Positions 13,208 through 52,254 of a DNA stretch of 64,000 nt are shown one piece after another. The DNA is from Macrostomum lignano (lineage: Eukaryota): NCBI GenBank assembly GCA_002269645.1, contig NIVC01001484.1:62001-126000 (forward strand), read 5' to 3'. A model generated the notes under the pieces. The model was given only the letters and a program-made list of their open reading frames with translations. It did no database searches and was not told the origin of the DNA. A program made the position numbers and the translations under genes. Numbering within the stretch: position 1 is the stretch's first letter; each line of letters begins with the position of its first letter.

Positions 13208-14857
13208 CTACTTGTCCCCAGTCCTGTTCATGTTGCGCATCATGGCAAAGATGTTGCCCTCCCGCGCTCCGCCGGACTTCTCCGTCACCCAGGCGGAGTC
13301 CATGAACTCGGACGTTGACCAGCGGTCCACGGCTGATTGAACAAGCAGGTGGCTCAGAGCGGCTCGACACTCGGCGCTGAGCTCCGAGCAGGTCTTGCAG
13401 CGGTTGCAGAGTCGGCCGTAATTGAAATCTTTGATTTCGTCGATGAGGTCGGACTCGGACCGGCTGGAGTAGGGCAGGCTGCCGTGCACCAGGCTGAACA
13501 TGATGATGCCCAACGACCAGACGTCGCATTTCTCTGTGTAGCTGCTGCACTTCACGATTTCTGGCGCCTGCATGGATTTGGCGGGTTGGTTGAATGGATG
13601 ATTGAAGTCACTGCGGCAGGAATTTCTACCATACCTGATACCTCCTCATGAGATGGCTGAGAGTAGTTAAGTCACAATGAAACCAAATGGGCTTCGAATT
13701 TGAGAGCTGCTCATACACACAGAGGCGCAGCTACGGAGGACTTGCTATGGTGCAAGGGGCCATCATATCTCATTCTTGCGCATGGTAATTGACGGAGTAT
13801 AATGGTCCGTCCCTATCGTGACTAGCGAACTTCATTACTTGCTTGCCCAATGTTTCCCCGCATCGCCATGAAAGCCATGACTATCCGCACCTGATAAGCC
13901 GGGGTGCCGACGTTGTCGCCCAGCGACTGGTCGGAGACGCGCAGTTCAATCGACAAGCCGAAGTCGGTGAGCTTCACCACAAACGGGCACGGGTGGGTAG
14001 CCGGTGACCCCTTGCGGTCCACAGCGGCTTCGCCTCGACGTCGGCAGAAACGCGGACTGCTGCCGTCGGTAGTTTTAGCCGACGGGATTCGTTTCAGCAG
14101 GCAGTTGTGCAGCTTCAGGTCGCGGTGCACAACCCGGTGGCGGTGCAGGTAGCTCAGCGCGCTGCCCAGCTGCCTCAAGGTGCACCTGGCGTCCTGCTCA
14201 GCGAATTGAGTCCGACGCTGCAACTCGTCGGCCAGGTTGCCGCCGTCGCACAGCTCCATGAACAGGTAGCAGCTGTTCTCTGACTCGTAGATGGCGTCCA
14301 CGGCGACGATGTTGGGGTGCCGGTGCCGGCTCAGAACGTGGATTTCGTTCTCCCAGGACTTGCCGTACTGCGTCTTTGGGTCCTTCTTCTTCACCATCTG
14401 AGGCGGCGGAGAGTGAAACAAATAAATAATCCATTAAAAAACAGTAGTAGGACTACAAAGAACGCAACTCTAAGAAGCTTCACTCCTGGTGCTTTGGTGG
14501 GCGCCACTGTCCCTACCTCGACCTGGGCTGGTAGATAGCACGTCGAACTAAGTGGGGGAGGATTTGGGGCCGCAGACAGTCCCCATCTCTTTGGCCCCTC
14601 TCTGACGTGCACTTTGCCCAGGCCAAACTGCATTGAGAAAGGAGAATTCCAGCTTGGCTTCATTCTGACAGCTGATTTACCTTCTTTACGGCGAATTTGT
14701 GCCCGTCGGAGATTCTCAGCGCCAGCAGCACGCTGCCGAAGGCGCCCTCTCCGAGCTTTTCGCCGAACTGGAAGGTCTCCTCAAGCTGCTGACAGGAGTC
14801 GATCTTAACAAATGGCACCACACTTGCCGTGTCGTCAGTGCTCGCCCATTTGGCCAT
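13208..14857 (-). CDS. STK33: STK33-like Ser/Thr kinase (CAMK group); 3 exons, ~347 aa
   Basis: Exons 14857-14681, 14397-13891 and 13567-13208, GT-AG, phase 0. Motifs GEGAFG, AVKK, HRDLKLHN, DFG, GTPAYQ|APE, DVWSLG. The N-terminal VPFVKID...LEETFQFG and C-terminal NIFAMMR resemble STK33-specific flanks. Confidence 0.78.
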
Positions 14858-16929: not shown

Positions 16930-18136
16930 TCAGCCCTTCCTGTGCACGATGCCCAGGCCGCAGTTGTACTCCTGCCTGGTGATCCACTTGGACTGGAAAG
17001 TGCTCAGCGAGGCCAGGATAGAGCCAACGACCCACATTGAGTACTTCCGCTGGGGCAGCGCCACCACTTTGATCTTGACGTCGGAGGGCGCCAGGCCGGC
17101 GATCTCCTTCTGCAGGCGGTCGGCGATGCCGGGGTACAAGCTGGAGCCGCCGCTGAGCATAATGTTTGAGCACAGGTCCCGTCTGATATCCACGTCGCAT
17201 TCGGTGACGCAGTCAAACACTGTCTGGTGGATGCCCACAGGCTCTAGTCCGAGATCTGACGGCTGGGACAGCGCCTCCGGACAGCGGAAGCGCTCGCTGC
17301 CGACGCTGATCAGCTGACCGTCGGGCAGCTCGTAGCTCTTCTCCAGGGCGTTGCTGGTGGCCGCAATGCGCGCCTCGTGCTCGAAGTCGAGCGCCACGTA
17401 GCACAGCTTCTCCTTGATGTCGCGGACGATCTGAAGTTGAATTCGCGCTGTTTGAGTAAATCCACAAGCTTTTCAGTGAGACTGCGACCAGCCAGATCAG
17501 TTTGGGAGATGGCTTTGGCTATCGGCTTGCCCGCATCGATGGGAACCGCGTCTGTAGAGCCCTCGCCAGAGTCCAGCACGATGCCGGTGGTGCAGCCGCT
17601 GACGTACAGCGACAGCACGGCCTGGATGGCGACGTACATGGCGGGCGTGTTGAAGGTCTCGAACATGATCTGCGTCATTTTCTCGCGGTTGGCCTTGGGG
17701 TTGAGCGGCGCTTCAGTGAGCAGTATGGAGTGCTCCTCGGGGCCACGCGGAGCTCCTTGTGGAAGGTGTGGTGCCAGATCTTCTCCGTGTTTGTCACAAC
17801 GCCGTGCTCGATCGGATACTTCGGTTCCACGAAGCCGCGTCTCTTCTGCGCCTCCTCGCCGACGTAGGTATCCTTCTGGCCTATGCCGAAAGTAACGCCC
17901 TAACCAAGTTCGGAAGTTCGATTGCTTATAGTTTTAGCCTTTAATTCTAAGTTATAGTAATTGCTGTAATCTTGGGCATGTGAAGCTGTAATGTAAAACA
18001 AAAACTTATATTTGTAATTCGGCTTCCTTACAAGGCTAGGGAAAATTTTCCTAGGCCTTTTCTCGCCCACAAAGCCGGCCTTGCAGGTGCCGGATCCGCA
18101 GTCAATCACCAGAACGGCCGAGTTGGCATCGGACAT
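16930..18136 (-). pseudogene. Actin-like gene with two frameshifts and several deletions (probable pseudogene)
   Basis: Actin motifs [69 protein letters not shown]. One intron (acceptor 17900-17901). Frameshifts: 1-nt loss in the G-run at 17739-17742 and at ~17431 (TTTAERE missing). WDD is also deleted, and the expected codon-41 donor is missing. Confidence 0.85.
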
Positions 18137-19193: not shown

Positions 19194-22130
19194 ATGGCAA
19201 ACCGTTTTGATCCTCAACCCGTGGATATTGACGGCGACTTCGGTCAAGTTGCAAGAGCTGCGGCACAGCACCTCAGCCAGTCTCTGGCTCAAACCGAATC
19301 GCTAGACCGAGAGCAACAGCTGCAGTTGCTCAAGCAGGTGCTGCTCAACAATCCTCTGCTTCTAGCCGTCCTGGAAGATCCCGAATGGCAGCGCAGCATT
19401 CGAGAGGCGGCTGTCCCGGTGCCGGGCGAAGCTCACCTTGGCGTCACCAGTGAGATCGCTCAGAATGTGCAGCCAGGTAAGCTTAGCTGTAAAGCATTCT
19501 GTGCTGTTAAACTGCGCACATCTAATATTGCAAAGGTTATTACCCCGAAACTTTATTAACCAAGCTAAAATAGTCATGGATGCATAGGATTTCAAACTTG
19601 TACATGTACGACTATAACACAATATCCATTCACCTTACTACAATTGACAGGAAATGTTCTAAACTTGTCCTACTACAAGCTTCCGCACAAGGTGGTGGTG
19701 GAGACCTGCAGCTACTCTCCCGATGAGAACAAGCTGGCCGTTACTGCCATCCACTATGGGAGGCTGGGCCTGCTGAGCCCCGTCACTGTGCTGCGTGAGG
19801 ACTTCCAGCTGCCTTGCAACGGCTCCAGTGTGTGGCTGCACACATTCCCGAACTCGGTGCTGTACTCAAACAAGGAATCGCTGTCTCGGGCACTCAGCCG
19901 CCTCGGTGAGAGACAGCACTATCCAACCAGCAACAACGCGCACACTTTGGCCGTGTGGTGTCGAGTTCGGGACTCGAGAAACCTGGACAGCGTTCGGGTT
20001 CCTCTGCTAGACGACAAACGGGAAGAGCTGCACCAGCTCATGCCGGCTGATCACATAGATGTATCGATCGGAAACCAGCAGGTGCACGCCGTCATCGCTT
20101 CGATCGAGTCTCTTGACGAAGTCAACGAAAGAAAAGTACTTTCTGTAGTGGCTCTGTCGGAAAGTCTACAGGTCAACGGAAATGCGTTTCAAACTTTCGG
20201 TAGAACTATGCTCGCTATAAACCCGAATGAGCGCGTTGAAAAACTGCAGCTGGAACTGAAACGCACCAATGTGGAGAAGAATGCGGAAATATTCAACAAC
20301 ACTCACCTGTGCCAGGAGTGTTCGGATTTGATGGCGATAAACTTTTTGGCAACAGGAACGGCCGTCGAGCCCAAGGCGCACGCTCGTTTTACCATCCATG
20401 TCAGCGAACTTCGTTCTAACGAGCTGATTTTCTACCAAGGCCGTATTCACTTCGTGATGAAGGTGGACCAGCCGGAGCGTGACGACCAAACCTATCAGAT
20501 TCACACGGTTTGTTACGCGCCGCTAAACTTGCAGACGGCGCCGAAGACGACCGAAATTCGCCTGCTCGTCAACCTGCGTGAGGCGGGCAAAGTGCAGCTG
20601 GTGCGGCACGCCGAGCCCGACCTGCAGTGTCCAGTTTTGTTGAACTGGAAATCCATGGATTCGCCGTTGATTACTACGCAAGCTGTAGAAGATCTGAGTC
20701 AACTTCAGCCAGGTGACGCTGTCTCAATCCAGGTCCAGGAGTGTAAAGCCAAGTATCCACTGTCGCCACTAATGCCTGGCCTGCACGCTATTGTCAAGAG
20801 AAACAGCACCAGTGATGGTTTTTTGGAAGTGATCTGCTTCAACGCGGGCGGCTCCGGCTTGGTTGAAGTCAAGCGCCTGCCAGTGAGCGATCACAAATTC
20901 AGCAAGATAAACTTCAACGTTAGCCGTGATTTGCTTTCGGACGGAGAGGATCCTTTGAGACGAGCGGAGGTTCGTCTTGGCACTGGTCAGTACTGCATCG
21001 CTTGGAACAACTCGCGTGACTTCGCTCGCTGGTGCTGCGTCAATCACAAGTCCAACGCTTCGTCGCACATCGGAGTAGTGACCAAGCCGGCAGATCTGGC
21101 CACGCTTTCATCTATGCAGCAGTCGGCGAAAGTGAGGCTGCAGCATCAGATTGCTGACCAAAGTGTGCTTCGCGAAGTGAGTCTGATCGATGTGAGCTCT
21201 CCGAACCAATTCACCAATGTTTTGAAGTTGAGCCTGATTAACGTCGATTGGTCAGTTAAGATGGTGCAAATTGTTAAGCTTGAGAACACCAGCCAGCTTC
21301 AAAAAGTACGACGGGTGCCTTACAATGGCAAGTCGGTAAGCGAAGCGCAGGCTCGGATATTGAGCGAAACAATCAACATTCTACTCGACTTGTCCCTTGC
21401 CAATGCCTCTGATCGCCAGCTGGGCTGCGGCCTTTCGGACCAAACTTTCTGTACCTGGCTGCGAGGCTTGAAGCAGGCCGGTCTGGTCGAGCTGCCTGCT
21501 CTGCTGTCGGCCGATGCTGCAGCAGACATTGGCTCGGGGCAAGACCTGGAACAAGTTGCAGATCTGTACGAGCTCAGCCAGTGGGATCATGTAGTTATTG
21601 AGAGACCTCAAGCACCTCAACTACACATGCTAGTTTTGGAGTTCAACGTTGAGTCCGGGGTGCTCTGTGGTTACACCTATGCACCAAGGCCCCAACAGGA
21701 TCCTGGCAAGCGCCTGGACATGTACATGTACTTTCCGCCGGACAAGGCCCCCTATCCAATGCACAAGGTCATCCGACGAACTCCAATAGACACCGACGCG
21801 AGTTCCGAGCTGAGCGCCAGTCTTGCCGCGGGCTCCAACTTCGCCGACAATGTGGCGGCCTGGGCCCAGCTCTGCGCGCTCGAATTGGACTCAAACCTTC
21901 TGCCGCAGTTAGACGACGATCTCAACAAATTGCTCAAGCTGATGCTCAGGTTTGCTCTCCGCTACGCTTCGGGCCAATATCCCGACGATGGCTCTCTGCA
22001 GACTTGCCGCGTCATCCTCGCTTCGGGTGGGTTCGCCAGATCACTGAAGAACGACCTGCGCTGCGAGGCCGCTTCACGACGGTTGTATTTTATTGTCCGG
22101 CTGATGGCTCGCATGGTTGAGTCGGAATAA
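19194..22130 (+). CDS. Multi-LRAT (permuted NlpC/P60, H-box/NC-like) repeat protein, paralogue A; 2 exons, ~920 aa
   Basis: Exons 19194-19476 (G|GTAAG) and 19651-22130 join in frame. LRAT-like motifs QPG|NVLNLSYYKLPH...AIH...RALSRLGE...NNAHTLAVWCR and LQPGDAV...LHAIV...RRAEVRLG...Y..AWNNSRDFARWC. Confidence 0.8.
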
Positions 22131-22984
22131 AACTGCTGTGACGATTTCGTGTTTACATTCATGCTTATTTATTCAGTATAGGCTTGACCCAAACAAGATG
22201 TACTGTACAGCACCTTGGGACCTTCTGGATGAGTTGAATTGCTTCGGAACGTATTAGAAGCTTTCTACCCAGTTTCACCGTCATTCTGAGAGAAAAATTA
22301 ATCAATTCATAGTTCTGCCCAAATCAGACGTACAATGGTTCTGTTGATTGATTTTAAAGCCCAACATCCTATCAGAAATTATTTTTCCTCTGACAATATT
22401 TTTGCTCTGCAACTCTGATTTTCAAAAACTTGCGCCAATAATTTTCATGCGAACCTGCACTGCTCTGTGCATGATTTAACAAATTTCAATGGTTTAAACG
22501 CTTAAAATACAAAAACTGGTTTACTGGATTTGAGTAGAATACGAGCTACTAACCAGATGTTATTCTATTTTTATGTTCGCTTTTAGTCTTGAGTTTCAAC
22601 TCAATTTTCCCTTTATCGTTTTACAAGGATTTCCAAATATATTGTAAGATATTATCGGCGTTGCACTTCCTTGACGCAATTATTCAGCAAAATTGAATAA
22701 TCTTATCTGGACTGGCAGAGACCTGACCTGAGAGACAATTGAGCTTATGGCTTCTCAATGTATTAGCATTGGAATTATGAGCGCTTACTGGAACAGTTTT
22801 TTAAGCATGCACTTCATTGAAGGCTGATCAGTCTGTTAACTTAGATAAGGATTAAAGGCGTTTGTTGGAGACCGACTATGGTCTTTCCATTCTGAGTGTG
22901 TTTGCTTAGAAACGCCATGGTAACAGATACCCGTATATAATTCTGTATTTAAAACATTTAATTTCTTATTCTAATAACATTTTT

Positions 22985-23298
22985 TAATAATTACAATCGT
23001 TACAATTTATTGCACCTGCTTTAATTGGGCCAGATGTGCGACCGACAGCTCATCCGCAGCTATTGCGCGGCGCATCTGAAGGCTGCGTACGGCTGTTCAG
23101 TCCAAGGGGGGGGGTCGCCACACCCTCAATTACCCCAGCTACAGTGTAATGCTGCACCCATTTTACAGCTTGGTGAACTGAAGCAACGAAGAGTTAAGTG
23201 TCTTGCTCAAGGACACCAATTGTCCTCGTTGGTTCGGGAATCGAACCCCCGACCTTCAAATCGTGAGTCCGACGCTCTGACCACTAAGCTACAACCCT
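22985..23298 (-). mobile_element. CORE-like tRNA-SINE, copy 2
   Basis: Reverse complement of the 12465 element: A box TAGCTTAGTGG, B box GGTTCGATTCC, GTGTCCTTGAGCAAGACACTTAACTC, and the same 3' body (CAGATGCGCCGCGCAATAGCTGCGG...). Confidence 0.82.
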
Positions 23299-24815
23299 CT
23301 TAAATTTATTAATTTAGTGAGAACATCCTTTTACGTAGTCATAACTGTCTTGCTTATTTGTTTCTTGTTGGCTGCCTTGCTTTTTACGATCTACGAGTAT
23401 TAGAACCCAAATCGAATTAAGGTTCATTCACTCCGTCATGAATTGAGCCGACAAAAAGCACGACGGGATGTACCAATGTGATTTTTTAATAGTACAAAGC
23501 CACGTGATCGCAGAAAAATGGGCCTTTTTTATTGTGATGTTAACAAAATGGTCTTGAGCGTATAGTGGTGGCTCAGAGTTCAAGAGTAACTTCCCGTCCA
23601 TCTGCTCTTCGAGTTCCTGGCCTACACGAACTGTCTTTGAACTCGATTTTTGAGTAGGCAAAGCCGCTGGGCCAAGTTGCTACAAGTTTAGAGCTGTTAG
23701 AGCTTTTGGGTAGCTTTTAGTAGCGCTCTGGGGCGAGTTTATTTCTCGTATTATGTTCAGGGCTTCCTACTCAGCGTACAGTGTTGTCTATGGTTGATGT
23801 CGAAGATACCAAAGGGAAAAGTACAAAGACAACCAATAGATTAATTTCTATACAGGAAGCTACTATATAATCCCTTTCTACATGATAAAATCCCTACATC
23901 ATTTTGGCAACCGGTACGTGTAGTTAAGACTTATTTTGGCGCCGCCGCAGGGCACTCGATTAGCTATGCGCCAGCTCTGGCAGATACAGCAAGGATTGGC
24001 TTCATGGACTTCTAAAACACTGGGAAAAGGACGTTGCAGGCGTCTCTTACGCATTTTCTCTGTCGAAACAAGGAAAATTCTTTCTTAACAGTAACTCTTT
24101 GAACCTGAACTGGGCTTTAGAACAGTTATTCAGCATCGGCGGTCACTGTCGAAATTGTAGTTTCTGACCTTTTGAGAAATCACATCAATAGTTCTGAGTA
24201 ACAGAATCGATTAGTGCGCGTCAATAGCATAAACTCTAATTAAAGTAGGATTGTAAGGTATGAAAGAAGTTACACTGTCTAGCTTGTACGAGCTACGTGC
24301 CTGTTTTACAGACTAAATAAACTGAAATTCTCAAAACCTCAGACCTTTCTCATACCTTACACGACGCACTCAATAATAGTCAGCCTTAACTCTCTCTCCG
24401 AGAGGGCGCTGTAGTGCTTGGTTAGACAGAGACTGCGAGCCTATGCACAACCAGATACTGCAAGATATGTACAGGCAACTATGCACTTCAAACTGAATGC
24501 TTTGGACAGAAAACAGTGAGGGACAGAGGGTTGAGAGCTGTGCTTGTCTGTCTGGGGCTATGCGACAGCGTACATTGTAAGCCTTGTGCAAATCTCTCAA
24601 TGCTTATCTACTGAGGCGCACGCGCTGGGCTTAGTCCAATTTAGACAACACTTGCCTACAAGTCTTAGATGTTTCTTGGTGCTTTATAATCTTATATTTT
24701 ATATTATAATTATTTATAATCTGCAGTACTGTGACCTTGTAGAAAAACAAAACTACACAGCTGCAGTCCAAAGCGGTGTTGCAACCAGAAGCTCTTAGTA
24801 TAGCAAGACTCGAAA

Positions 24816-27649
24816 ATGGCCGCCCCTGCCGACCTCTCGCAGCTGACGCAGCAGCTGGAGTGCTCAGTCCGCGAGCTGGAGAAGCTCACTCTGATGACCA
24901 GAGAGCAGCAGCTGTGGCTGCTCAAGCAAGCCATAATTAGCAAGCCCTGGCTGCGAGCCGTACTGGAGGACGCCTGCTGGCAGAGGAGCATCCGTGAGGC
25001 TACAACGCCTGTGCCAGACGAGCGTTCCGAAAAAGTAACCAGCGAGCTGGCCAAGACCATCAGACCAGGTAAGAAGCATACACTTTTCTAGTAACAAATG
25101 GTTTGAGTTAAAAAATCTAGGTTTTAACCAATCGACGTACTGGTATTTAACTGGAAATTTTAGGCAACGTTCTAAACTTGTACTACTACAAGATTCCGCA
25201 CAAGGTGGTGGTGGAGACCTGCAGCTACTCTCCCGATGAGAACGAACTGGCTGTTACGGCTATCCACTATGGGAGGCTGCGCCTGATGAGCCCCGTCACG
25301 GTACGGCGTGAGGACTTCCAGCTGCCTTGCAACGGCTCCAGCGTGTGGCTGCACACATTCCCGAACTCGGTGCTGTACTCAAATGAGGAATCGCTGTCTC
25401 GGGCACTCAGCCGCCTTGGTGAGAGACAGCACTATCCAACCAGCAACAACGCGCACACTTTGGCCGTGTGGTGTCGAGTTCGGGACTCGAGGAACCTGGA
25501 CAGCGTTCGGGTTCCTCTGCTCGACGACAACCGGAGAGAGCTGCACCAGCTGATGCCGGCTGATCACGTCAATGTGTCACTTTTTAACCGCGACATTCGT
25601 GCAGTCATCGTTAATGCAAAGCGTCTGGACCCGGTCAGAAAGTACATGATCCTGGATATTGTTGCCGCTACGTCAGATGTTGCTAACCTGCACGCATTCA
25701 CTAGAACATCGATCAGTCTTAATTCAAGCGATCCAATTGATCGGCTGAACCTTCAGTTCCGTAGACAGGATGTTCACCAGACTGTCGAATGCTTCGCAGG
25801 AGTCTGCTTGTCTTGGGGGTGCAGTCCACTCATGGCGATGACCTTCTCTCTCAGCGGCGTTCGCGCGGAACCAGAGCTTCGCCGAACCAGAGTCTCAGCC
25901 AGCCAGCTGGTCTCTGGAAACGTAATCGCGCACGACCACCGCGTCCAAATAGTGCTGTCCGTGCAGCGGCCAGCAGATCCTAAAACTGCGTACAATTTTG
26001 AGATTCTCGACTACCTACGGGTGAATACTGACGTGACGCAACATACTAAGCAAGTCAGTATCGTGATTGATCCAACTGAGCACGATAAAATTCAGCTGAT
26101 TCGGCACAGCGAGCCAGATCTACAGTGTCCGATACTGAGGACGTGGAAGCAGAAAGACCTGCCGTCGATCACAGAGCAGCCAGTGGCGCAAGTCACTGAC
26201 TTGCAGCCTGGCGATGCGGTGTGCATCCGAGAAAAGTCTGACGTTCATCCTTTGGAAACTAGTCTGCCTGGTCTTCACGCCATTGTGAAAGGAGTGAATG
26301 AAGACGACAGCAAAGGCTTGTCAGTTGATGTAGTCTGCTTCGGTGAAGAGAGAACGTTGTGCATCGGCGCTGTCCAAGTGCCAGAAAAGGGGCACGTGTT
26401 TAGTACACTACACTTCCAAGTCAGTGCAGAGCTGCTGGCTCCAAGAGAGCAAGCGCTACAGAAAGCGGTGGCTCGGATTGGCACCTACGGTTACTCCTGC
26501 GCCTGGAACAACTCATGCGACTTTGTTCGCTGGTGCTGCGTCAATCACAAGACCAACGCGCCTAGGCACCTAGGCGTTGTGACTGAAATCAGCCAGCTGC
26601 TCGCCCTGACCGCGCTGGGCCAGGGTCAGCTGAGATTTTCGCACGATCGCTCTGACAGCTCGGAAACGTTGCAGTTTGCCGAAGCTCGCCTTGTTGCCGT
26701 CAGCCCGTGTGGGGAGTGCATCGACCTGGCCAAGTTGAGTCTGACGGATATTGACTGGCAGCCGAACAGCGTGCAAAAGTTGACCATAACCAAGATCAGT
26801 GAAGGTAGCCGCGTGAGCCGGGTGACGTACGGCGATGAGCAAGCTGTGAGCGAATCCAAGGCTCAAATGCTGAGCGACACATCAAAAATTCTGCTCGGCT
26901 CGTCGCTAGCAAACGCCTCGGACAGACGCCTGGGCTGCGGTGTGTCGGACAGCCGCTTCTGCGCCTGGCTGCGCGGCCTGCGCCGACCCGGCCTCGCTGA
27001 ACTGGCCGCTCTACTGTCGGCTGACAGCGCAGCCGCGAGTGAGCCACCGGAAGCGAACGAACTCGTGACGGACTTCGGATGCCTGCACCGCTGGGATCAC
27101 ATTGTAATTGAGAGAGGTGAGGCCGCTCCAATTCACCTGCTGTTTGTTGAGGCGAATCCGGACACCGACTCGATTTGCGGATTCTCCTATGCGCCCAACG
27201 ACGAGCACGATCCCAGCGGCCGCTTGGACATGTATATGTACTTCCCGCCGGACCGGGCGCCCTACCCCATCGAGAAGGTGATTCAACGGGTTCCCCTGGA
27301 CGGCAATTTGAGCTCGGAGCTGAGCTCTAGCCTTGCTGCGACAGCCAACTCACCAGAGGATGCGGCAGCCTGGGCGCAGCTCTGCGTACTGGAGCTGGAG
27401 AACGACCTCGTCAAACTGCCAGCCGAACTGAGCCGGCCGCTCAAGGCGATGCTAAAATTCGGCTTCAGAGTTGCTGCCGGGCTCGGTGAATCAGGCGCTG
27501 GATCGCGCGACGCCTGCGCTAGAGGCTTGGCCTCCGCTAGCCTGAGGCGCCTGGTCTCTGCCACCTTGGAAACCGTGTCGGATGACGTCGGCAGGCGGCT
27601 GCTGTTCCTTCTGAAGCTGATTGCCAGCTTCATCGCTCCAGAGGCTTAG
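24816..27649 (+). CDS. Multi-LRAT repeat protein, paralogue B; 2 exons, ~912 aa
   Basis: Exons 24816-25068 and 25164-27649, with the intron at the same position and phase as in paralogue A (PG|N). Collinear motifs NNAHTLAVWCR, LQPGDAV, WNNSCDFVRWC, DMYMYFPPD..PYP, AAWAQLC.LEL. Confidence 0.8.
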
Positions 27650-27818: not shown

Positions 27819-28620
<802 letters not shown>

Positions 28621-29620
28621 GTCGGTCTATCTATCTATATTTTCAATTTCAAACCGCTGAAATTAAATGTGTGTTAATGAAACAAATTGAAAACTTGATT
28701 AAGAATTAATTAAGAGTTCTCAAACGTAAGATACTGCTGCCATCCATAAGCGTTTTTGATAATTCGTAGTACGAGTACAAGGGAGTTAAAATTGTTTTAC
28801 AAAACAGTAAAAGCAAGTCAGTACATGTATTGAGCTACTCGAATACGCCTTATACATGCGTATCTAGCTTTGTTTGAGTAGCAATGGTACCCAAAGGACG
28901 TCTTTGTTACGATGTTATTAAAGGGTCCTTCGTTAAACGCATGAGTCTTTGAGATCCATTGAGGTTGCGCTGTTAATTTAGTGTGAGTTTACAGCCATAG
29001 ACAGAAATCTGTGTGACCAGACGGGGAGGTCGGGAGCTCGAATATCACCCGCTTCAGCTTTTCAGGTTTGTTGACATGGCAACTCTATACACACCTCAAT
29101 CAGAAATATGGATAGGCAGGGGCAGGCCCAGGGCAGTCCTGGCTCGCAGAACGTTAGCAACGAGCTGCTCCATGTAGCGCAGCAGGGTTGGATCGCGAAC
29201 TTGATCGCTGTCCTGTGGACCGAGGTCCTTCCAGCTTCGGTAGCGATGCACGCCTGCGAGCCGGAAGTTGACATACTCTGTGCCCCAACCTTTGGTGTAC
29301 CGCCACATCAACTGCACGCCCATGAGTTGCACGAAATGCGGCTTGACGATCATCTTTGACGGGGTGCCATGTAGGCGCACCTCGTCGTGGTGCAGTTTCA
29401 GCAGAGCGCTCAGCTTCAGGCCGGAGATCGTGGCGTTGGCTGACATCTCGCTATCGGCGGGCCACTCCAGCCAGAAATCTGCGTGCTGAAGTGACAGGCC
29501 AGCGGCTTTATTGTCCGACATGCGTTCTCGAACCAGGTCCCGCCAGTTGCTAAGACCCTCGCTTCTCGGTACAACGACCTCGTTCATGTCGGTGAATACA
29601 GCGAACTCGTATTTCGTATT

Positions 29621-31608
29621 ATGATCCGCAAAAGGTTTGTGACATCCACACTTATGGGCGTTACCCTCACCCGGGCGGTGATGAAAGGCGGCCCGCAAGG
29701 TGGCGTGCTAACTCCACTTCTCTGGAATCTCGTCATGGACGAACTTCTAACCGCTGACATTCCCAGCAGTATCACCAGGGCGGGCTACGCCGATGACGTT
29801 GCCGCGGTCGTCAGCGGACCCGACCCCGCCACTCTGCGCAACCTGATGCAGCAATTCGCCGACAAGGCGGCCGACTGGGCTACACAGCATGGCCTAAAAA
29901 TCAGCGTCACTAAGACTGTCGCTGTCGTTTTCACCAAGCGCCGTAAGTGGGAGATGAAAAACCTCACTGTCTATGGCAGAAACATCCCCTTCAAGAAGGA
30001 GGTCAAATACCTCGGTGTGACGCTAACGCATGACCTGCGCTGGACGAAGCACCTTGATAACGTCATCGGTCGGGCAAAACGCTGCTTTGCCCAGCTGCGC
30101 AGAGCCATCGGGCCGACTTGGGGCCTCTCGCCTAGAACGGTCCGTTGGATTTATACCGGCATCATCCGGCCCAGTATCACATACGCGAGTCTCATCTGGA
30201 CTAGCGTGCTGGAGCAGAAGGCCGCCCGTCAGCGGCTGTACCAGCTTCAGGGCAGCATTTGCCGTGCCATCACAGGTGCGTACCCGTCCACCCCTTACGA
30301 GGGGCTGAACACTATCCTTAACCTACCTCCGCTTCACCTATTTATTAGGGCGGAGGCTATGAAGTCTGCCTCCCGGCTTATCAGAGATAAAACGTTAAAT
30401 AACGCGCCCTCTGGCTTTATGCCAATGAAAACATTAATCCCGCATATGGACTTTGTCCGCCGCGACCTTAACAACATCCACATGGACCTGGGCAATGTGG
30501 ATAGTCGACCTCCCGCCCTCAACATCAGGAGGGGCTTCAAGACCGCCATCCCTGGCCGAGACAACATTCCGCTGGATGTCGGTGTGAACCGGCGCAGCCA
30601 GGGCATTCACTGCTTCACCGACGGCTCGCTGTTCAACGGCCGCGCTGGAGCGGGTATTGCCATTTTCCACGAGGGTAAGATGCTTCTCCAGGAAAGTCTG
30701 CACCTCGGTGAGAACACCTCAGTTTTCCAAGCTGAAATTTGCGCCATTGAGCAGTGTGCCCAGCAACTGTTTCAGGCGAACATTAATAATTTTGACATTA
30801 ATTTCTACACTGATAGCCAAGCTGCTATTAAGGCCTTAACCACTGAGAATATCTCCGCTGCTACAGTATCTCAATGCCACCGCAGTGTGCAATCTCTCTC
30901 AGTCCTTAACAGGATTAGAATTATCTGGACACCTGGTCACAGCAACATCCTGGGCAACGAGCTCGCGGACTCTCTCGCCAAGGAGGGCAGCAACCCAGAC
31001 GGCAACCACCGTCTGATGAGGCTACCCACCCCCAGGTCGCAAGTCACCCGCCATATCAACAGGTGGCTCCATCAGCAGCACCAGCTCCACTGGAACAGCT
31101 GCACCGAGTACAGGCAGAGCCGCTCTGCCATGCCTAACCTGAACAGGAAAGTCTCTGATTATCTGATTTCGCTTAACAGAACCGACCTCAGGGAGATGTG
31201 CATGGTCCTAACCGGCCACGGATTCTTCCAGAGACATATATCGTTGCAAACCGGTTGCCCTCCCACCTGTCCCTTCTGTGGCATAGGAGAGGAGACCGCG
31301 GAGCATCACGTCACCTTCTGCCCTTACTTCAACAAGGCGCGGCACAAATACCTCGGCCACCCCCAGCGGATGGACGAGCTGACCACCGCGGACAATATCC
31401 GAGACCTCCGCGCCTTCGTCCGGGACTCCGGCCGGATGAGGGTCGCCGATGCCTCCACTGCGGACCTGCCGACTACTGGCGGGGACTGGGCGCACCCCCA
31501 AGGCTAATCCTTGTGCTCTTTTACCTTGGGGTTGCGATAGGGGCCTCGCGGCCTATTCGCGGCGCCTGCGCCCCCCGTCAGTAGTAAGTAAGTAAGTAAG
31601 TAAGTAAG
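29621..31608 (+). mobile_element. 5'-truncated non-LTR retrotransposon (RT C-half + RNase H + C-terminal Cys/His motif; R1/LOA-like, I group)
   Basis: Uninterrupted 628-aa ORF 29621-31507: [24 protein letters not shown]; RNase H residues FTDGS, AE, YTDS, GNELAD; LTGH...CPFC...ETAEH...CP. Short GC-rich 3' UTR, (TAAG)6 tail at 31585-31608, flanking TT on both sides. Confidence 0.93.
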
Positions 31609-34644: not shown

Positions 34645-35325
<681 letters not shown>

Positions 35326-35829
35326 TGGCTATTTGTCTGCCCAGTGAGTTGAAGACCCAGTTATAAACAATGTACTAATATATAATTACAGGAAAGCAGT
35401 GGGCGCTGCATAAAATACAATATTTATTTTATTCTCCAACTGGATCAATTAAAAAGTGCACATGCGAGCACCCGAACTAAGATCGAACGGTAGATATGCT
35501 CAGTAGTGCAAGATCGCAGGAACAAATATTTAGATACTACAGACTCAGACTCAGGACAGGTCTTTGAGCAGCTTTTGTTTCAACGTTGCCATATTATAGA
35601 AGGCTGTCCTCAGTCTGCTCAAAGAGCCAATTTGAAGAAGAAAAATTATAACTGAAACATGAGAACGCAAACCTGACACCGTAAGACTAGGGAGTTTTTA
35701 GCGGTAAATTGAAAACAGAAAAATAGCAGTTCGGGAGAGAAAAATTGGAGATCTTACATTTGTCTTTCAGTCTGTGCACCTTTCTGCATTCTCTGGCAAA
35801 GGGTCTGGCCTGACTTGCTTTGAGTATTT

Positions 35830-38644: not shown

Positions 38645-39351
<707 letters not shown>

Positions 39352-40362: not shown

Positions 40363-40439
40363 GTGACAGCACCTATAAAACATCCCTCAGGCCCAACAAA
40401 CGAAACCATATCAGCACGCCAAGAAACCCAGTGCTAAAC

Positions 40440-41421
40440 CTTGGCAGGCTGCCCATCACTGTGGACGCCTGAGTGAGGATGCCCAGCAGGGTGAGCAGCC
40501 CCAGAGTCACTCTGGCGGGCACGGCCTCAATGTTGATCCAGAAGTTGAGCCAGCTCACGGCCACGATCAGGATGGCGGGGATGTAGGTGCCGGACAGGTA
40601 GCTCCCCAGCTGCCGCTCCAGCTTGAAGACGGCCTTCAGGCACGCGTAGCTGCCAGTGGTTGTCGCGCTGTCTCGAGTGCAGTCGCTGACAGCCACGCCA
40701 GCCGGGGTGTTGAACTCGGAGATCTGCATGGATGTGTCCAGCTCCACTGGCTGGCTGGTGCTCTGCTCCCGCTTCCAGTGGAACACCAGGTTCTTGGTGG
40801 TGTACCCGTAGCTGCCGATGTTGATGTAGCACGTCTGCGTGTCCATAGGAAACGTCTGCAGCTGCATCTGGCAGGAGAACTTCATGGTCACCTTCTGCGA
40901 GTACAGAATGCTGCCGTCTGGGTCCACCCTGATCAGGTAGTTCGGCTGCGTCATCTTGTGCAGGTAGCCCTCCTTGCCGTTGCGGAAGAACAGGTCCGGC
41001 AGCCAGAGGTTCTCCTTCTTGGCGGGAATGGCGATGGACTCGTTGTAGAAGCGGAACTGGTTGTGGTGCCACATGAGGCGGTGGTCCTTCCAGTACTGGC
41101 GCAGGTACATGTCCAGCGTGAACTCCATGTTGATGACGTCCACCTTGTTGATGCTGAGGATCTTCATGTTGACGAACACCTCAGTCGGAGGCTCGACAAG
41201 CAACATTTCGTTGCCAGCTTTGGCTGGCGAACCGTCCCTGTCGCAGTGAGGCGACGGCCTCTGGTGCTTGTTGTAGCCGCGGAAGATGTGCTCCACAATT
41301 CTGTCCACCACACCGCTGTGGTTCCCGCCGCCTCCGCCACCGACTCCAGTGGCCGCTCGCCGCTGGCCAAGCAGATGAGGCTGCAGCGGAGTAGCTGCAT
41401 GACAAACCAGTGACTCAGCAT
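40440..41421 (-). CDS. Cys-loop anion channel (GluCl/GlyR-like) exon B: signal peptide, ECD, TM1, TM2; apparent 1-nt frameshift near the N-terminus
   Basis: Cys-loop CQMQLQTFPMDTQTC, loop C DC...TGSYACL, AVPARVTLG, phase-2 donor AG|GTTTAG at 40439. The ATG at 41421 (MLSHWFVMQLLRCSLICLASG) is out of frame with the ECD by 1 nt. Confidence 0.82.
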
Positions 41422-42094
41422 GACTGCCTTGAGCTCTTGAGCTTTTTCGTAGCCGTTAAACTCAGTTTTATACAGAGCAACCGGGACCAGCCAATCCCAG
41501 ATAGAGAGGCCGTCTTGCGGGTCTCAGCCGAGGGTTTTTGCTCTCCAATGCGAGCCGGAGTTTAGCCGAACGATGGCGCTCTTGACGCAGCTTCTCGGGT
41601 GTTTTTTTACAGGTGCGAGGCGAATTTCCATGGGAGAAAAAGTGATTCTGAGAAGCCTGAAGCCTCGTTGTTGCACTGACAACTTGGCGAGTCGATACGC
41701 ATTTTCATTGCACCACGGTTGCCATGGCGCGTCTGTCGAGAGGCCACGAATTTATGTATACAAACCTCTGAGACAACTAATAGCTAAGTTTCAGCGAGAT
41801 ATTGATATATCGTTCTTTGTTTGTTTTACTACTGATAGTAGAGACCCTGGAGCGTGATGAAAAATATTGTGATTTCCATTTTCTTGGATGCATGCGTCTG
41901 ACGCTGATTCCCGGTGACTTGGACCACCTTTTCTGACACGATGTAGCATTTTCCTCTGCGTCAGACTGACTGACCCAGTCCTTTGCGCATAATCCGACTC
42001 ATTTTGCGTGTCTGGCCAATACAGACCATGTAGCTCGTATGTATGCGTCTGACCACACAACCGTGTGCATTTGACTCACTTTGTCTGTTCGTCT

Positions 42095-42360
<266 letters not shown>

Positions 42361-43530: not shown

Positions 43531-43565
43531 CCTTGCTATTAAACTGCTCAGACTCCGCCACTCAC

Positions 43566-44572
43566 CTGGGCAGGTTGTTGATGACGGACATGCCCTGAGT
43601 GAGGATGCCCAGCAGGGTGAGCAGCCCCAGAGACACCCTGGCGGGCACGGCCTCAACGTTGATCCAGAAGTTGAGCCAGCTCACAGCGATGATCAAGATG
43701 GCGGGGATGTAGGTAGCAGACAGGTAGCTTCCCAGCTGCCGCTCCAGCTTGAAGACGGCCTTCAGGCACGCGTAGCTGCCCGTGCTGGTGGTGCTGCTTT
43801 TCGAGCAGTCGATCACCTTGACACTTTTGGGCGTGTTGAACTCGGAGATCTGCATGCTGGAGTCCAACTCGACGGGGCTCTTCTTGCCCTTCAGCCAGCG
43901 GAACTCCAGGTTCTTGGTGGTGTACCCGTAGCTGCCGATGTTGATGTAGCACGTCTGCGTGTCCATAGGAAACGTCTGCAGCTGCATCTGGCAGGAGAAC
44001 TTCATGGTCACCTTCTGCGAGTACAGAATGCTGCCGTCTGGGTCCACCCTGATCAGGTAGTTCGGCTGCGTCATCTTGTGCAGGTAGCCCTCCTTGCCGT
44101 TGCGAAAGAACAGGTCGGGCAGCCAGAGGTTCTCCTTCTTGGCGGGAATGGCGATGGACTCGTTGTAGAAGCGGAACTGGTTGTGGTGCCACATGAGGCG
44201 GTGGTCCTTCCAGTACTGGCGCAGGTACATGTCCAGCGTGAACTCCATGTTGATGACGTCCACCTTGTTGATGCTGAGGATCTTCATGTTGACGAACACC
44301 ACGGTGGAGTCCTCCTCAATGCGGCCGTCCGGCCGGGAGCGGCGGGCCGGCACCGGACGCTGGTGCTTGTTGTAGCCCTGGAAGATGCTCTCCACAATGC
44401 GGTCAACGATGTTCGTGTAGTTCGGGGCCGCTGCGCCCTGCCGGATGCCGCCGCCGTCCCCGGTGGCCACGGCGGCCAGCACGCTGACTGACGACGGTGT
44501 CGCCGCACTGAGCAGCAGACCGACTGTCAGCAGGACGCCTGCCAGCAGGCCGCCACCCGCCCGGAGCTGCAT
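43566..44572 (-). CDS. Cys-loop anion channel (GluCl/GlyR-like) exon A: signal peptide, ECD, TM1, TM2
   Basis: ATG at 44572 (MQLRAGGGLLAGVLLTVGLLLSA signal), Cys-loop, loop C, AVPARVSLG, phase-2 donor AG|GTGAGT at 43565. Splicing to 37971 gives an intact 495-aa subunit. Confidence 0.9.
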
Positions 44573-45944
44573 AAGTGAAGTGACGGCGTGCTGAAGTTGA
44601 CGCTTGCCGCTGTTCAACAGCCGGGCCAGCTGAGGTGCTCGGCTTGGCGGTTCTCGCCCGCCTCCGGACCCCCCCCCCCGCTCCTTCTTCTTCGCTCCGG
44701 CAGCCGCGCCCGGTTGGCTGCCGCTCCGGACTCAGCTGGTTGGCCCTGCAGCGGGCCGTGACGCAGCCGGAAAATAAATCAATTATTGATCGAGGGGAAC
44801 GGCCCCGACCTCTGAGGACTGTCACTCCTTCTCCACCTCTAAGCTTCAGCCCGTTCCGCTGCTCTCGCATTCATTCTACGGGGCCGACTTGCGCAAGGCG
44901 CCCCCGCGACCTGCGGTGAAAAAGTCTCTTAAGTAGCGAGTGGAGACTGCTGCTGTAGGGCAGAGGCCTTCAGTGCCCCTCTTATCCGGAGGCTGAGGTC
45001 AGGCGCATTGTCTTTACTGCGGCTCAGGATCTGCCTGTCTCCGCCTTCTGATTACTGTGTAGTGAGATGCTCATTTTATCAGGTTAATTAGCTTCTAGTG
45101 TTCAGATATTGGATGTCGAAAAGGTAATGTTCTCTTCTACTTGAGCTAATTGAGCCCTGTGTCTGGGTCTCTGCTCCGATGCCTATGACTCAGTATAGAC
45201 ACTGCTCAGATGCCTATGACTCAATAGGCACTACTCAAGAGATATTTAATTTATAACATCAAATGAGCAACACTACATATCGGCAGATACAAGCACACCA
45301 ATGAGGTGGTGGGGAGGCGGGCACTGCTCTCCTGCCTCTCCTCTCCATCCTGCCTTCCTCTTAAACCAAAAGCTCGGGCTCTTGAAATGCAAACTTTCGG
45401 CTGTATTGGCTAACGAGCTCGGGGCTTGAAGGCCTATTCGAGTTTCGAATACCCACTGAGAGCTCGGGACAGGTGGGGAAAGATTAGAGTCGAGCGGATC
45501 AAAACCGGATTGAGATGGACTTTCGATTGAGTCTTTCCCCCGAGGCCTCTCGGTTCGAATTCCGAGACTAATAGGGGGCAAAAGGGGGGCTTAGGGGAGT
45601 CAGGTGAGAGGTAACTTGAGAGACAATCGGTCCGGATGGAGTTGAAGGGAGCTGGGATGAGCGCGGGGGGGGGCAGCAGAGCACGCGATCCCCAGCTTAA
45701 AACCCCCAACTTTCTGAAGCAAAAATCGCTACAATTTAATCTGGCACCGTGCGCTCCTGGCTTCTGACTGTCGTCTTCGTTTTTAAAGAACTTTAAACAG
45801 CATGAATAAGCTGTAAAACTGTCCTCCCTCTGACTCATGATATCATAATAGCCTAATTAAAATCTTTTTCCGATGCCTGGAAAGCTGTCGAAATCTTTTG
45901 GAAAGGTAGCTAGATACTAGTAATAAGAGTTTAGAAGTAAGTGA

Positions 45945-46325
45945 CAGAAGATACAAGTGAGTGACGGAATTTACAGGTGAGGGACGGAAGATACAGGTGA
46001 GGGACGGAAGATACAGGTGAGTGACAGAAGATACAGGTGAGTGACAGAAGATACAGGTGAGGGACGGAAGATACAGGTGAGGGACGGAAGATACAGGTGA
46101 GTGACAGAAAATACAGGTGAGTGACGGAAGATACAGGTGAGTGACGGAAGATACAGGTGAGTGACAGAAGATACAGGTGAGTGACAGAAGATACAGGTGA
46201 GTGACAGAAGATACAGGTGAGTGAAAGAAGATACAGGTGAGTGACAGAAGATACAGGTGAGTGACAGAAGATACAGGTGAGTGACAGAAGATACAGGTGA
46301 GTGACAGAAGATACAGGTGGACGGT
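45945..46325. repeat. 20-bp minisatellite GTGACAGAAGATACAGGTGA
   Basis: Tandem copies. Confidence 0.96.
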
Positions 46326-47344: not shown

Positions 47345-47410
47345 AGACAAACAGACAGACAGACACTAAGACAGACAGACAGATACAGACAGACAGACAG
47401 ACAGACACTA

Positions 47411-47443
<33 letters not shown>

Positions 47444-47471
47444 CAGACAAATAGACAGACACGGACAGAAG

Positions 47472-47527
<56 letters not shown>

Positions 47528-47607
47528 CAGACAAATAGACAGACACGGACAGAAGGACAGACAGACAGACAGACAGACACAGACAGACAGAGAGACAGAC
47601 AGACAGA

Positions 47608-47702
<95 letters not shown>

Positions 47703-52110: not shown

Positions 52111-52254
52111 GGACTAATTAACCTTTCAAGCTGCTTTTTACATCGTCAATCGGGCAGCAAGACCAACGCGACTGTATTAAATTTCAATTCAAAAATCGGG
52201 TGTCAATATTTTGAACAATCGTACACAGACAAGCATTAGGCTGAGAAGTACTAC

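What the first reader, a model, noticed from the sequence alone, without database searches (positions are those of the whole stretch)
19194..27649. Tandem pair of ~915-aa poly-LRAT pseudoenzymes
Seen: domain 1 aligns with PLAAT/LRAT, with PGNVLNLSYYKLPH matching PGDLIEIFRPFYRH in His spacing, then AIH, V.RE.F, RALSRLGE and NNAHTLAVWCR where the family has NCEHF. A second clear copy reads LQPGDAV...LHAIV...R..RLG..Y..AWNNS(R/C)DF.RWC. Further degenerate openers (HQLMPADH, SQLVSGN, LSQWDH/LHRWDH) and a closer (FC(T/A)WLRG) suggest up to 5-6 modules. The catalytic Cys position is Ala (19938, 25451) or Ser (21012, 26513); paralogue B has a Cys one residue later (26516). Established: FAM84/LRATD proteins are single-domain Cys-to-Ser pseudoenzymes of this fold. 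Inference: a lineage-specific, fast-diverging multi-LRAT scaffold family, possibly a lipid-binding or immune sensor.
Basis: partly seen in the sequence, partly recalled or inferred. Interest (0 to 1): 0.75.

Follow-up and report, generated by a model that had tools for sequence, protein, structure and literature searches.

The report
Tandem dead multi-LRAT genes in flatworm
Two neighbouring flatworm (Macrostomum lignano) genes each encode a ~915-residue protein made of six lipid-acyltransferase-like (LRAT/PLAAT) modules that have all lost the catalytic cysteine; this is an uncharacterised, probably non-enzymatic offshoot of a flatworm gene family whose other members keep one live module and a membrane anchor.

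Summary
The window is Macrostomum lignano DNA. It holds two intact, two-exon, head-to-tail paralogues: A (19194-22130, 920 aa) and B (24816-27649, 912 aa). All quoted motifs and residue coordinates are correct.

Profile comparison shows six LRAT/PLAAT-type modules per protein. D1 and D4 are unambiguous (E about 1e-18 against catalytically intact LRAT domains). D6 is clear (1e-9). D2, D3 and D5 are degenerate but beat all controls. No module keeps the catalytic Cys.

New context:
- Seven or more paralogues, all in M. lignano, share this six-module layout. Most keep a canonical NNCEHF motif in D6 plus 2-3 C-terminal hydrophobic helices. The window pair lacks both, so it is a soluble, fully dead derivative.
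- D1 is 93% identical in DNA between A and B, against saturated divergence elsewhere. This is a roughly 417-bp gene-conversion tract that starts at the splice acceptor.
- Bivalves and a hemichordate carry other poly-LRAT arrays, with one live domain and up to 10 Ser-substituted ones.

Structure prediction was low-confidence and the fold search was uninformative. Function is untested; I infer a binding or regulatory scaffold. This is a new variant of a known kind, of moderate interest.

The parts
19194..19476 (+). Gene A exon 1: ATG, an N-terminal helical region and the first residues of module D1. Ends on the first base of the Gly95 codon.
   Evidence: Sequence read and splice junction. The spliced product is 98% identical to the GenBank model P0001.
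19477..19650 (+). Gene A intron (GT..AG, 174 nt).
   Evidence: It is not conserved with the intron of gene B.
19651..22130 (+). Gene A exon 2 (stop codon 22128-22130). Modules: D1 19458-19997 (spans the intron), D2 19998-20381, D3 20382-20663, D4 20664-21065, D5 21066-21503, D6 21504-21905, helical tail 21906-22127.
   Evidence: Module limits come from the family alignment and the AF2 secondary structure. hhalign against LRAT profiles is.
24816..25068 (+). Gene B exon 1.
   Evidence: matches P0002.
25069..25163 (+). Gene B intron (GT..AG, 95 nt).
25164..27649 (+). Gene B exon 2. Modules: D1 25050-25510 (spans the intron), D2 25511-25882, D3 25883-26161, D4 26162-26566, D5 26567-27013, D6 27014-27415, tail 27416-27646, then the stop codon.
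19938..19940 (+). Ala191 of A, at the position of the catalytic Cys in D1 (NNAH). The two His positions are kept: H107 at 19686 and H129 at 19752. The B equivalents are Ala at 25451 and His at 25199 and 25265.
   Evidence: hhalign alignment to NNCEHF domains; coordinates.
21012..21014 (+). Ser549 of A, at the catalytic Cys position of D4 (WNNSRDF). In B the Ser is at 26513 and a Cys follows at 26516. Across the paralogues this position reads S, D, R or G, so no nucleophile is conserved.
21780..21850 (+). D6 catalytic-helix region of A (..SLAAGSNFADNVAAWAQLC..; coordinates approximate). It is nine residues shorter than in the paralogues, which read ..Y.LLFNNCEHFVNYLIYGR.. here. No Cys or His remains.
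   Evidence: Family alignments. The D6 family profile hits PLAAT2 (4dpz) at E 1.9e-6.
19649..20065 (+). Gene-conversion tract, copy in A. It is 93.3% identical over 417 nt to 25162-25578 in B, starts at the splice acceptor, and covers D1 and the start of D2.
   Evidence: blastn, alignment and windowed dS of 0.07-0.3 against more than 1.3 elsewhere.
25162..25578 (+). Gene-conversion tract, copy in B.

Best explanation
Shown:
- The region holds two intact paralogous genes of Macrostomum lignano in tandem; their GenBank counterparts are RNA-seq-derived models, so both are taken to be transcribed.
- Each encodes a protein with no signal peptide and no hydrophobic segment. The layout is an N-terminal helical region, six consecutive LRAT/PLAAT-type modules (circularly permuted NlpC/P60: an N-terminal beta-sheet half and a C-terminal helical half), and a four-helix tail.
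- The six modules form a duplicated unit, [D1-D2-D3][D4-D5-D6].
- None of the six has the catalytic cysteine: D1 has Ala, D4 has Ser, D6 has a nine-residue gap or substitution across NCEH, and D2, D3 and D5 are degenerate.
- The closest paralogues in the same genome have the same six modules but keep a canonical NNCEHF cysteine in D6 and 2-3 C-terminal hydrophobic helices.

Inferred:
- The window pair is a soluble, catalytically dead branch of a family of membrane-anchored multi-LRAT phospholipid acyltransferases or phospholipases.
- It most likely acts by binding rather than catalysis. The candidates are acyl chains or membranes held in the vestigial active-site grooves, or the live paralogues themselves, in the manner of other pseudoenzyme regulators.
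- D1 is probably the key working part. It is the best-conserved module, keeps both His residues, and is kept nearly identical between the two genes by gene conversion.
For: - Gene structure and integrity. The overall pN/pS pattern indicates purifying selection (dN 0.44 against a saturated dS of about 1.3). The GenBank models are built from RNA-seq (PMC5730564).
- Organism and family.
- Six-module layout shared by eight paralogues.
- hhalign of module alignments against 36 NCEH-intact LRAT domains gives D1 1.3e-18, D4 7.8e-19, D6 9.3e-10, D5 2.7e-4, D2 1.1e-3 and D3 2.7e-3. The N-terminal, tail and reversed controls give 0.013-0.87.
- Against the wider LRAT-like set the values are D1 2e-34, D4 3.6e-25, D6 2e-7, D3 9e-7, D2 9e-5 and D5 1.2e-4.
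- The real scores (21-58) exceed all 40 column shuffles in every test; shuffle maxima were 14-21.
- The reference domains are bona fide LRAT: Pfam scores of 64-85 bits and hits to PLAAT2/3/4 structures at about 5e-6.
- A D1-only Macrostomum profile retrieves proteins whose only Pfam domain is PF04970.
- The paralogues pass the Pfam LRAT gathering score.
- D1-D2 aligns colinearly with D4-D5.
- The AF2 secondary structure repeats about five strands plus two helices six times. This matches the permuted NlpC/P60 description in PMC3142127.
- Hydrophobic segments are present in the NCEH-bearing paralogues and absent in A and B.
- Conversion tract.
Against: - No structural confirmation. The full-length AF2 model is low-confidence (pLDDT 57, pTM 0.32), Foldseek against the PDB gave no hit at E<=0.001 and no PLAAT chain among the top hits, and the D5-only model was unusable (pLDDT 43).
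- Single-sequence Pfam finds only D4, below threshold.
- The D1 and whole-protein profiles give no direct PDB sequence hit.
- D2, D3 and D5 rest on weak profile scores (E 1e-3 to 1e-7), and D3 matches only the beta half.
- The binding or regulator function is pure inference: there are no expression, localisation, interaction or lipid data.
- The exact alignment of the D6 gap is ambiguous.
Confidence: 0.6

Rival explanations
1. Only D1, D4 and D6 derive from LRAT. D2, D3 and D5 are unrelated beta-rich spacer domains, for example SH3-, Tudor- or Agenet-like barrels, so the protein is a three-LRAT scaffold with other modules between.
For: - D2, D3 and D5 give only E 1e-3 to 1e-7 in profile comparisons and no Pfam hit.
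- D3 matches only the beta half.
- The top, non-significant Foldseek hits of the whole model are KOW, Tudor and SH3-like barrels.
- UniRef labels one relative 'Agenet-like'.
Against: - The real scores beat all 40 column shuffles by 7 or more SD, as well as the reversed and N/C controls.
- The alignments are colinear over nearly the whole LRAT profile for D2 and D5.
- D1-D2 aligns colinearly with D4-D5.
- The same strands-then-two-helices pattern appears in all six units.
- In the paralogues D5 carries Y.H.AILRE and S.DFC.WLK at the His and Cys-helix positions.
- The Foldseek hits are not significant and come from a low-confidence model.
Confidence: 0.2
2. The proteins are still enzymes. A non-canonical nucleophile would carry out acyl transfer or hydrolysis: Ser549 with His473 in D4, the adjacent Cys of B, or the invariant Cys of the WC(K/R) motif.
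For: - His1 is retained in D1, D4 and D6.
- Ser sits at the Cys position of D4 in both genes.
- B has a Cys one residue later.
- W-C is invariant in D1 and D4 across the family.
Against: - The Cys-equivalent position is not conserved among paralogues: S, D, R or G in D4 and A, S, G or P in D1.
- The WC cysteine is also present in intact NCEHFxxWC domains, so it is structural.
- The one module that is catalytic-looking in the paralogues (D6) has lost NCEH in A and B.
- The membrane anchor that LRAT and PLAAT enzymes use to reach their substrates is absent (PMC5133064).
Confidence: 0.1
3. The pair are decaying duplicates with no function of their own. On this view they are non-functionalised copies kept open only by recent duplication or conversion.
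For: They have lost the catalytic motif and the membrane anchor, and large parts diverge quickly (34-48% identity between A and B in D2-D5).
Against: - Both reading frames of about 915 codons are intact even though synonymous divergence is saturated (dS above 1.3).
- pN is about half of pS or less throughout.
- Both correspond to GenBank models built from RNA-seq transcripts.
- Further near-identical copies in the GenBank assembly are also intact (P0001, P0002).
Confidence: 0.05

Closest known systems
PLAAT1-5 (HRASLS) phospholipase A/acyltransferases and LRAT (Pfam PF04970; permuted NlpC/P60)
   Same: The domain type is the same: an N-terminal PGD..H strand region, then a helix carrying NCEHF. 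The paralogues' D6 reads FNNCEHFVNYLIYGR and hits PLAAT2/3 structures. As in PLAAT and LRAT, those paralogues end in hydrophobic helices (PMC5133064).
   Different: PLAAT and LRAT have a single domain with a Cys-His-His triad and are membrane-anchored enzymes. The window proteins have six modules, no catalytic Cys in any of them, and no anchor.
LRATD1/LRATD2 (FAM84A/B)
   Same: They are soluble and their molecular function is uncharacterised.
   Different: They are single-domain vertebrate proteins, whereas this is a six-module array from a flatworm-specific expansion. No specific sequence relationship was tested here.
Unnamed poly-LRAT proteins of bivalves (Mercenaria, Potamilus, Sinanodonta, Mytilus) and Ptychodera ('LRAT domain-containing' or 'uncharacterized protein')
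   Same: They are tandem arrays of LRAT-like modules in which most modules have Ser or Ala in place of Cys. D1 of the window proteins matches their pseudo-modules at E 1e-24 to 1e-10.
   Different: Their single live NCEH module is N-terminal and is followed by 1-10 RSxH or RSWD modules. The Macrostomum family has its live module last (D6) with a membrane anchor, and the window pair has no live module at all.
The M. lignano six-module paralogues (Mlig011640, Mlig034298, Mlig027402, Mlig000580, Mlig023781 and others)
   Same: They share the six-module layout and are colinear over positions 88-790, at 20-23% identity. They are also often arranged as neighbouring genes: PAA47238 with PAA47239, and PAA65928 with PAA65929, lie on the same contigs.
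   Different: They retain NNCEHF in D6 and 2-3 C-terminal hydrophobic helices. They lack the N-terminal helical region (REQQL..LLKQ...AVLED..WQRSIREA) that is specific to the window pair.

Membership tests
LRAT / PLAAT family (Pfam PF04970) | The single sequence reaches the Pfam gathering score (24.3 bits). | tested here: not met
   A scores 22.7 bits and B 19.9 bits, and only on the D4 helix. D1 alone gives no hit. The paralogues P0004-P0009 do pass, at 35-57 bits.
LRAT / PLAAT family (Pfam PF04970) | Homology to bona fide LRAT domains at profile level over the whole domain. | tested here: met
   Against 36 NCEH-intact domains that themselves score 64-85 bits on PF04970 and hit PLAAT structures, D1 gives 1.3e-18, D4 7.8e-19 and D6 9.3e-10. 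A D1-only profile retrieves PF04970-only proteins. D2, D3 and D5 are weaker (1e-3 to 1e-7) but beat all controls.
LRAT / PLAAT family (Pfam PF04970) | Catalytic Cys in the NCEHF motif at the start of the C-terminal helix. | tested here: not met
   D1 has Ala (19938 and 25451). D4 has Ser (21012 and 26513). The D6 motif is lost in a nine-residue gap. D2, D3 and D5 are degenerate.
LRAT / PLAAT family (Pfam PF04970) | Upstream His residues of the Cys-His-His triad, in permuted order (His before Cys). | tested here: inconclusive
   His1 is present in D1 (H107), D4 (H473) and D6 (H753). His2 is present only in D1 (H129). The alignments in the loops are uncertain by 1-2 residues.
LRAT / PLAAT family (Pfam PF04970) | Permuted NlpC/P60 fold: a beta-sheet N-subdomain and a helical C-subdomain. 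| tested here: inconclusive
   The AF2 secondary structure shows six units of about five strands plus two helices. However, pLDDT is 57, Foldseek gave no significant PDB hit, and the D5-only model failed.
LRAT / PLAAT family (Pfam PF04970) | C-terminal transmembrane anchor. | tested here: not met
   The maximum Kyte-Doolittle 19-residue mean is 1.18 for A and 1.51 for B. The NCEH-bearing paralogues have 2-3 segments above 2.0.
LRATD / FAM84 pseudoenzymes | A single LRAT domain with Ser replacing Cys, and vertebrate orthology. | not tested
   No LRATD sequence was compared. The architecture (six modules) and the taxon differ, so I treat this as analogous rather than orthologous.
Macrostomum six-module LRAT family (unnamed) | Colinear D1-D6 layout with the conserved linkers and motifs RA.SRL.E..WC(K/R), VP(I/L), WN.S.DF.RWC and DH(I/V)V..R. 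| tested here: met
   The profile search aligns positions 88-790 with P0004-P0007 at E 1e-42 to 1e-37.
Bivalve-type poly-LRAT arrays (unnamed) | An N-terminal live NCEH module followed by an array of RSxH or RSWD pseudo-modules. | tested here: not met
   There is domain-level homology only. The order and number of modules differ, and the window proteins have no live module.

The most novel reading that the evidence does not exclude
Poly-LRAT proteins would be an unrecognised class found in spiralians and a hemichordate, in which one live PLAAT-like phospholipid-remodelling domain is tethered to an array of dead LRAT modules. The dead modules would act as lipid- or membrane-recognition or substrate-presenting units. 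The window pair would then be the first fully dead, soluble members, working as trans-acting regulators or decoys of their membrane-anchored live paralogues, with D1 kept identical by gene conversion because both must dock to the same partner.
Probability: 0.25. Interest if true: 0.6.

Novelty: new variant of a known kind. Interest (0 to 1): 0.45.

Why it matters
LRAT/PLAAT domains are known as single-domain lipid acyltransferases and phospholipases (retinoid storage, N-acyl-PE synthesis, organelle clearance). Their Cys-less vertebrate relatives, LRATD1/2, remain mechanistically unexplained.

Here the same fold is concatenated six times. A graded series exists within one genome: membrane-anchored paralogues with one live module, and this soluble pair with none. 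That gives a natural system for asking what dead LRAT modules do, in a flatworm that supports RNAi and transgenesis.

The finding also flags larger poly-LRAT arrays in bivalves that are not described in the searched literature. The practical value is annotation and a hypothesis. No long-standing question is resolved.

Tried and rejected
- Whole-protein and D1 profile searches against PDB sequences found nothing at E<=10.
- Single-module Pfam scans hit only D4, below threshold. The few other hits (zf-CRD, FAN1_TPR, Ig_CFAP65) had E>0.02 and I dismissed them.
- The AF2 model of full-length P0001 with eight paralogues had pLDDT 57. Foldseek against the PDB gave no significant hits, and I do not accept the top KOW/Tudor/Pelota barrels as evidence.
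- The AF2 model of D5 alone had pLDDT 43 and was not searched.
- The word-indexed homologue searches with the full protein and with the eight-sequence family alignment returned only the two GenBank counterparts. The exhaustive representative search was needed to find relatives.
- Self-hhalign with only two sequences detected just the D1 and D4 helices, at E 0.01.
- The UniRef names of family members ('SHR-BD', 'SET', 'Agenet-like') were not reproduced by Pfam scans and I treat them as automatic labels.
- A search for the gene identifiers in the literature found nothing. Searches for multi-LRAT or LRAT pseudoenzyme arrays found nothing relevant.
- The look-up of the P0005 locus gave no neighbouring gene calls.
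- I considered a transposon or viral origin and pseudogene status and rejected both. The ORFs are intact, there are only two copies in the window, and the flanking genes are ordinary host genes.

Full report
**What is there**

The window is Macrostomum lignano (free-living flatworm) nuclear DNA. The spliced product of the first gene is 98% identical to GenBank BOX15_Mlig026335g1 (P0001), and the second corresponds to BOX15_Mlig006580g1 (P0002).

- Gene A: exon 1 19194-19476, a GT..AG intron, exon 2 19651-22130, 920 aa.
- Gene B: exon 1 24816-25068, an intron, exon 2 25164-27649, 912 aa.
- Both are on the + strand, head to tail, 2.7 kb apart. There is no third copy in the window.
- The GenBank annotation of this genome was built from RNA-seq transcript assemblies (PMC5730564), so both genes are transcribed.

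**Are these real, constrained genes?**

A and B are about 50% identical. Outside one tract, synonymous sites are saturated (dS above 1.3) while pN is about half of pS or less. The overall figures are dN 0.44 and dS about 1.3. Two intact ORFs of about 915 codons at that divergence argue against pseudogenes.

**LRAT relationship**

Single-sequence Pfam gives only a sub-threshold LRAT (PF04970) hit on the WNNS(R/C)DF helix of D4: 22.7 and 19.9 bits against a gathering score of 24.3. It gives nothing for D1.

The exhaustive search of 1.84 billion representatives with the A/B profile found 62 relatives. P0004-P0009 align colinearly over positions 88-790 at E 1e-42 to 1e-30. All of them are M. lignano proteins, and they pass the Pfam LRAT threshold at 35-57 bits. 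The remaining hits match mainly D1 and are multi-domain proteins of bivalves (Mercenaria, Potamilus, Sinanodonta, Mytilus), Ptychodera and unnamed transcript contigs.

I seeded from a canonical LRAT domain (P0057; Pfam 84.8 bits; NNCEHF) and collected about 200 LRAT-like domains from these proteins. I then built two reference profiles. One uses all 183 non-Macrostomum domains. The other uses only the 36 domains with an intact NCEH motif, and a profile built from 11 of those hits PLAAT2/3/4 and the LRAT chimera in the PDB at about 5e-6.

| Module or control | E vs wider LRAT-like set | E vs 36 NCEH-intact domains |
|---|---|---|
| D1 | 2e-34 | 1.3e-18 |
| D2 | 9e-5 | 1.1e-3 |
| D3 | 9e-7 | 2.7e-3 |
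| D4 | 3.6e-25 | 7.8e-19 |
| D5 | 1.2e-4 | 2.7e-4 |
| D6 | 2e-7 | 9.3e-10 |
| N-terminal region | 0.52 | 0.47 |
| Tail | 0.29 | 0.35 |
| Reversed modules | 0.005-0.34 | 0.013-0.87 |

In 40 column shuffles per test, no shuffle reached the real score. Real scores were 21-58, shuffle maxima were 14-21, the shuffle mean was about 10 and the SD about 2. A profile made only from the eight Macrostomum D1 sequences retrieves proteins whose sole Pfam domain is PF04970, at 4e-6 to 1e-4 in 5.8 billion sequences.

I conclude that D1, D4 and D6 are LRAT domains beyond reasonable doubt. D2, D3 and D5 are probably degenerate LRAT modules. D3 matches only the beta-sheet half.

**Architecture**

- D1-D2 aligns colinearly with D4-D5 over 247 columns. 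One paralogue, P0008, carries an extra N-terminal D1'-D2'-D3' block. The array therefore looks like a duplicated three-module unit.
- The AF2 model of the full protein is low-confidence overall (pLDDT 57, pTM 0.32). Its secondary structure nevertheless repeats the same pattern six times, about five strands followed by two helices, at 97-199, 229-329, 353-428, 451-557, 587-699 and 741-839.
- Helices flank the array at 15-72 and 850-917.
- That pattern matches the published description of permuted NlpC/P60 domains: a beta-sheet N-subdomain and a helical C-subdomain bearing the Cys (PMC3142127).
- Foldseek of the whole model against the PDB gave nothing significant and no PLAAT chain. A D5-only model failed (pLDDT 43). 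Structural confirmation is therefore still missing.

**Catalytic status**

| Module | Position of the catalytic Cys | His residues |
|---|---|---|
| D1 | Ala (19938 in A, 25451 in B) | both His kept |
| D4 | Ser (21012 in A, 26513 in B); B has a Cys one residue later (26516) | His1 kept |
| D6 | lost | His1 kept |

Across the paralogues the Cys-equivalent position is not conserved: S, D, R or G in D4 and A, S, G or P in D1. These modules are therefore dead family-wide.

In D6, the paralogues P0004, P0005, P0007, P0008 and P0009 read ..FNNCEHFVNYLIYGR.., which is PLAAT-like; the D6 profile hits 4dpz at 1.9e-6. A and B are nine residues shorter exactly there (..AGSNFADNVAAWAQLC..) and have no Cys or His.

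The NCEH-bearing paralogues whose models are complete at the C-terminus also end in 2-3 strongly hydrophobic segments (P0005 itself, a shorter model, shows none). A and B have none. LRAT and PLAAT enzymes use a C-terminal transmembrane helix and a thioester on the NCEHF cysteine (PMC5133064). The window pair thus lacks both the nucleophile and the anchor that the family's live members retain.

**Gene conversion**

A 417-nt tract (19649-20065 in A, 25162-25578 in B) is 93% identical, and 97.5% identical in its core. The rest of the genes are 40-65% identical. Within the tract dS is 0.07-0.3. The tract begins at the splice acceptor, covers D1 and ends at the start of D2. The introns are unrelated.

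I read this as gene conversion confined to the exon by loss of intron homology. A nucleotide-level constraint cannot be excluded.

D1 is also the module best conserved with the other paralogues, at 33% against 17-25% for the rest.

**Mechanism (inferred)**

These are soluble, non-catalytic six-module LRAT-fold proteins derived from membrane-anchored enzymes that have one live module. Permuted NlpC/P60 domains have hydrophobic, lipid-binding S1 pockets (PMC3142127), and LRAT-type domains can dimerise by domain swapping (PMC5133064).

The most economical reading is therefore a binding scaffold. It would bind lipids or membranes, or it would bind the live paralogues as a regulator or decoy, with D1 as the critical interface. 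No tool here can test this.

**Comparison with known families, and novelty**

- The domain kind (LRAT/PLAAT) and the idea of Cys-less LRAT pseudoenzymes (LRATD1/2) are known.
- Concatenated LRAT modules are not described in the literature I could search. That covers both the Macrostomum six-module family with a C-terminal live module and the bivalve arrays with an N-terminal live module followed by up to ten Ser-substituted modules. Databases label some of these proteins 'LRAT domain-containing'.
- I rate this as a new variant of a known kind, of moderate interest.

**Genomic context**

The flanking genes are ordinary animal genes, and the window is rich in tandem repeats:
- a protein kinase and an actin gene upstream;
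- a (CTGT)n array and a truncated LINE downstream;
- two Cys-loop receptor genes;
- a RagA GTPase gene.

Nothing in the neighbourhood points to a function for the pair.

Noticed in passing
window 19649-20065 and 25162-25578: The two paralogues share a 417-nt tract at 93% identity (core 97.5%), while the rest of the genes are saturated at synonymous sites. The tract starts exactly at the splice acceptor and the introns are unrelated. This is probably gene conversion limited by intron divergence, but why the boundary is so sharp is not explained.
   Followed up: partly
proteins P0010-P0063 (for example P0013 Potamilus, P0011 Mercenaria, P0029 Mytilus, P0034 Ptychodera, P0018 unnamed): Bivalves and a hemichordate encode proteins with one N-terminal intact LRAT domain (NCEH) followed by 1-10 tandem LRAT-like modules with Ser or Ala in place of Cys (RSxH, RSWD, SAWE). 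This class of poly-LRAT arrays was not found in the literature searched.
   Followed up: partly
protein P0008 (M. lignano Mlig000580g1, 1379 aa): This paralogue has an extra N-terminal D1'-D2'-D3' block, nine modules in all. That suggests the three-module unit is the unit of duplication.
   Followed up: partly
window 27819-28636: A (CTGT)n microsatellite of about 205 copies lies directly downstream of gene B. Similar tetranucleotide arrays are at 34651-35339, 38646-39351, 42082-42360 and 47312-47875.
   Followed up: no
window 45900-61100: There is a dense series of unrelated minisatellite arrays (periods 20-161 nt, for example 56734-58781 with a 27/134-nt unit). The strand shows strong G over C skew, with GC skew up to 0.42.
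   Followed up: no
window 29096-31507: A truncated non-LTR retrotransposon ORF (the RT from profile position 113, plus RNase H) lies at 29621-31507 on the + strand. It abuts or overlaps a glycosyltransferase family 92 fragment on the - strand (29096-29698).
   Followed up: no
window 40373-41311 and 43562-44617 (- strand): Two tandem Cys-loop ligand-gated ion-channel gene fragments (ligand-binding domain plus the start of the membrane domain) form another local tandem duplication.
   Followed up: no
window 13822-14421, 16930-17678 and 61191-62120 (- strand): Neighbouring host genes: a protein kinase domain exon, actin exons and a RagA/Gtr1 GTPase. None has an evident link to the LRAT pair.
   Followed up: no
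database names of P0001, P0009 and P0058: UniRef labels family members 'SHR-BD domain-containing', 'SET domain-containing' and 'Agenet-like domain-containing'. Pfam scans of the window proteins and the paralogues show only LRAT, so these names look like automatic or fused-model artefacts.
   Followed up: partly
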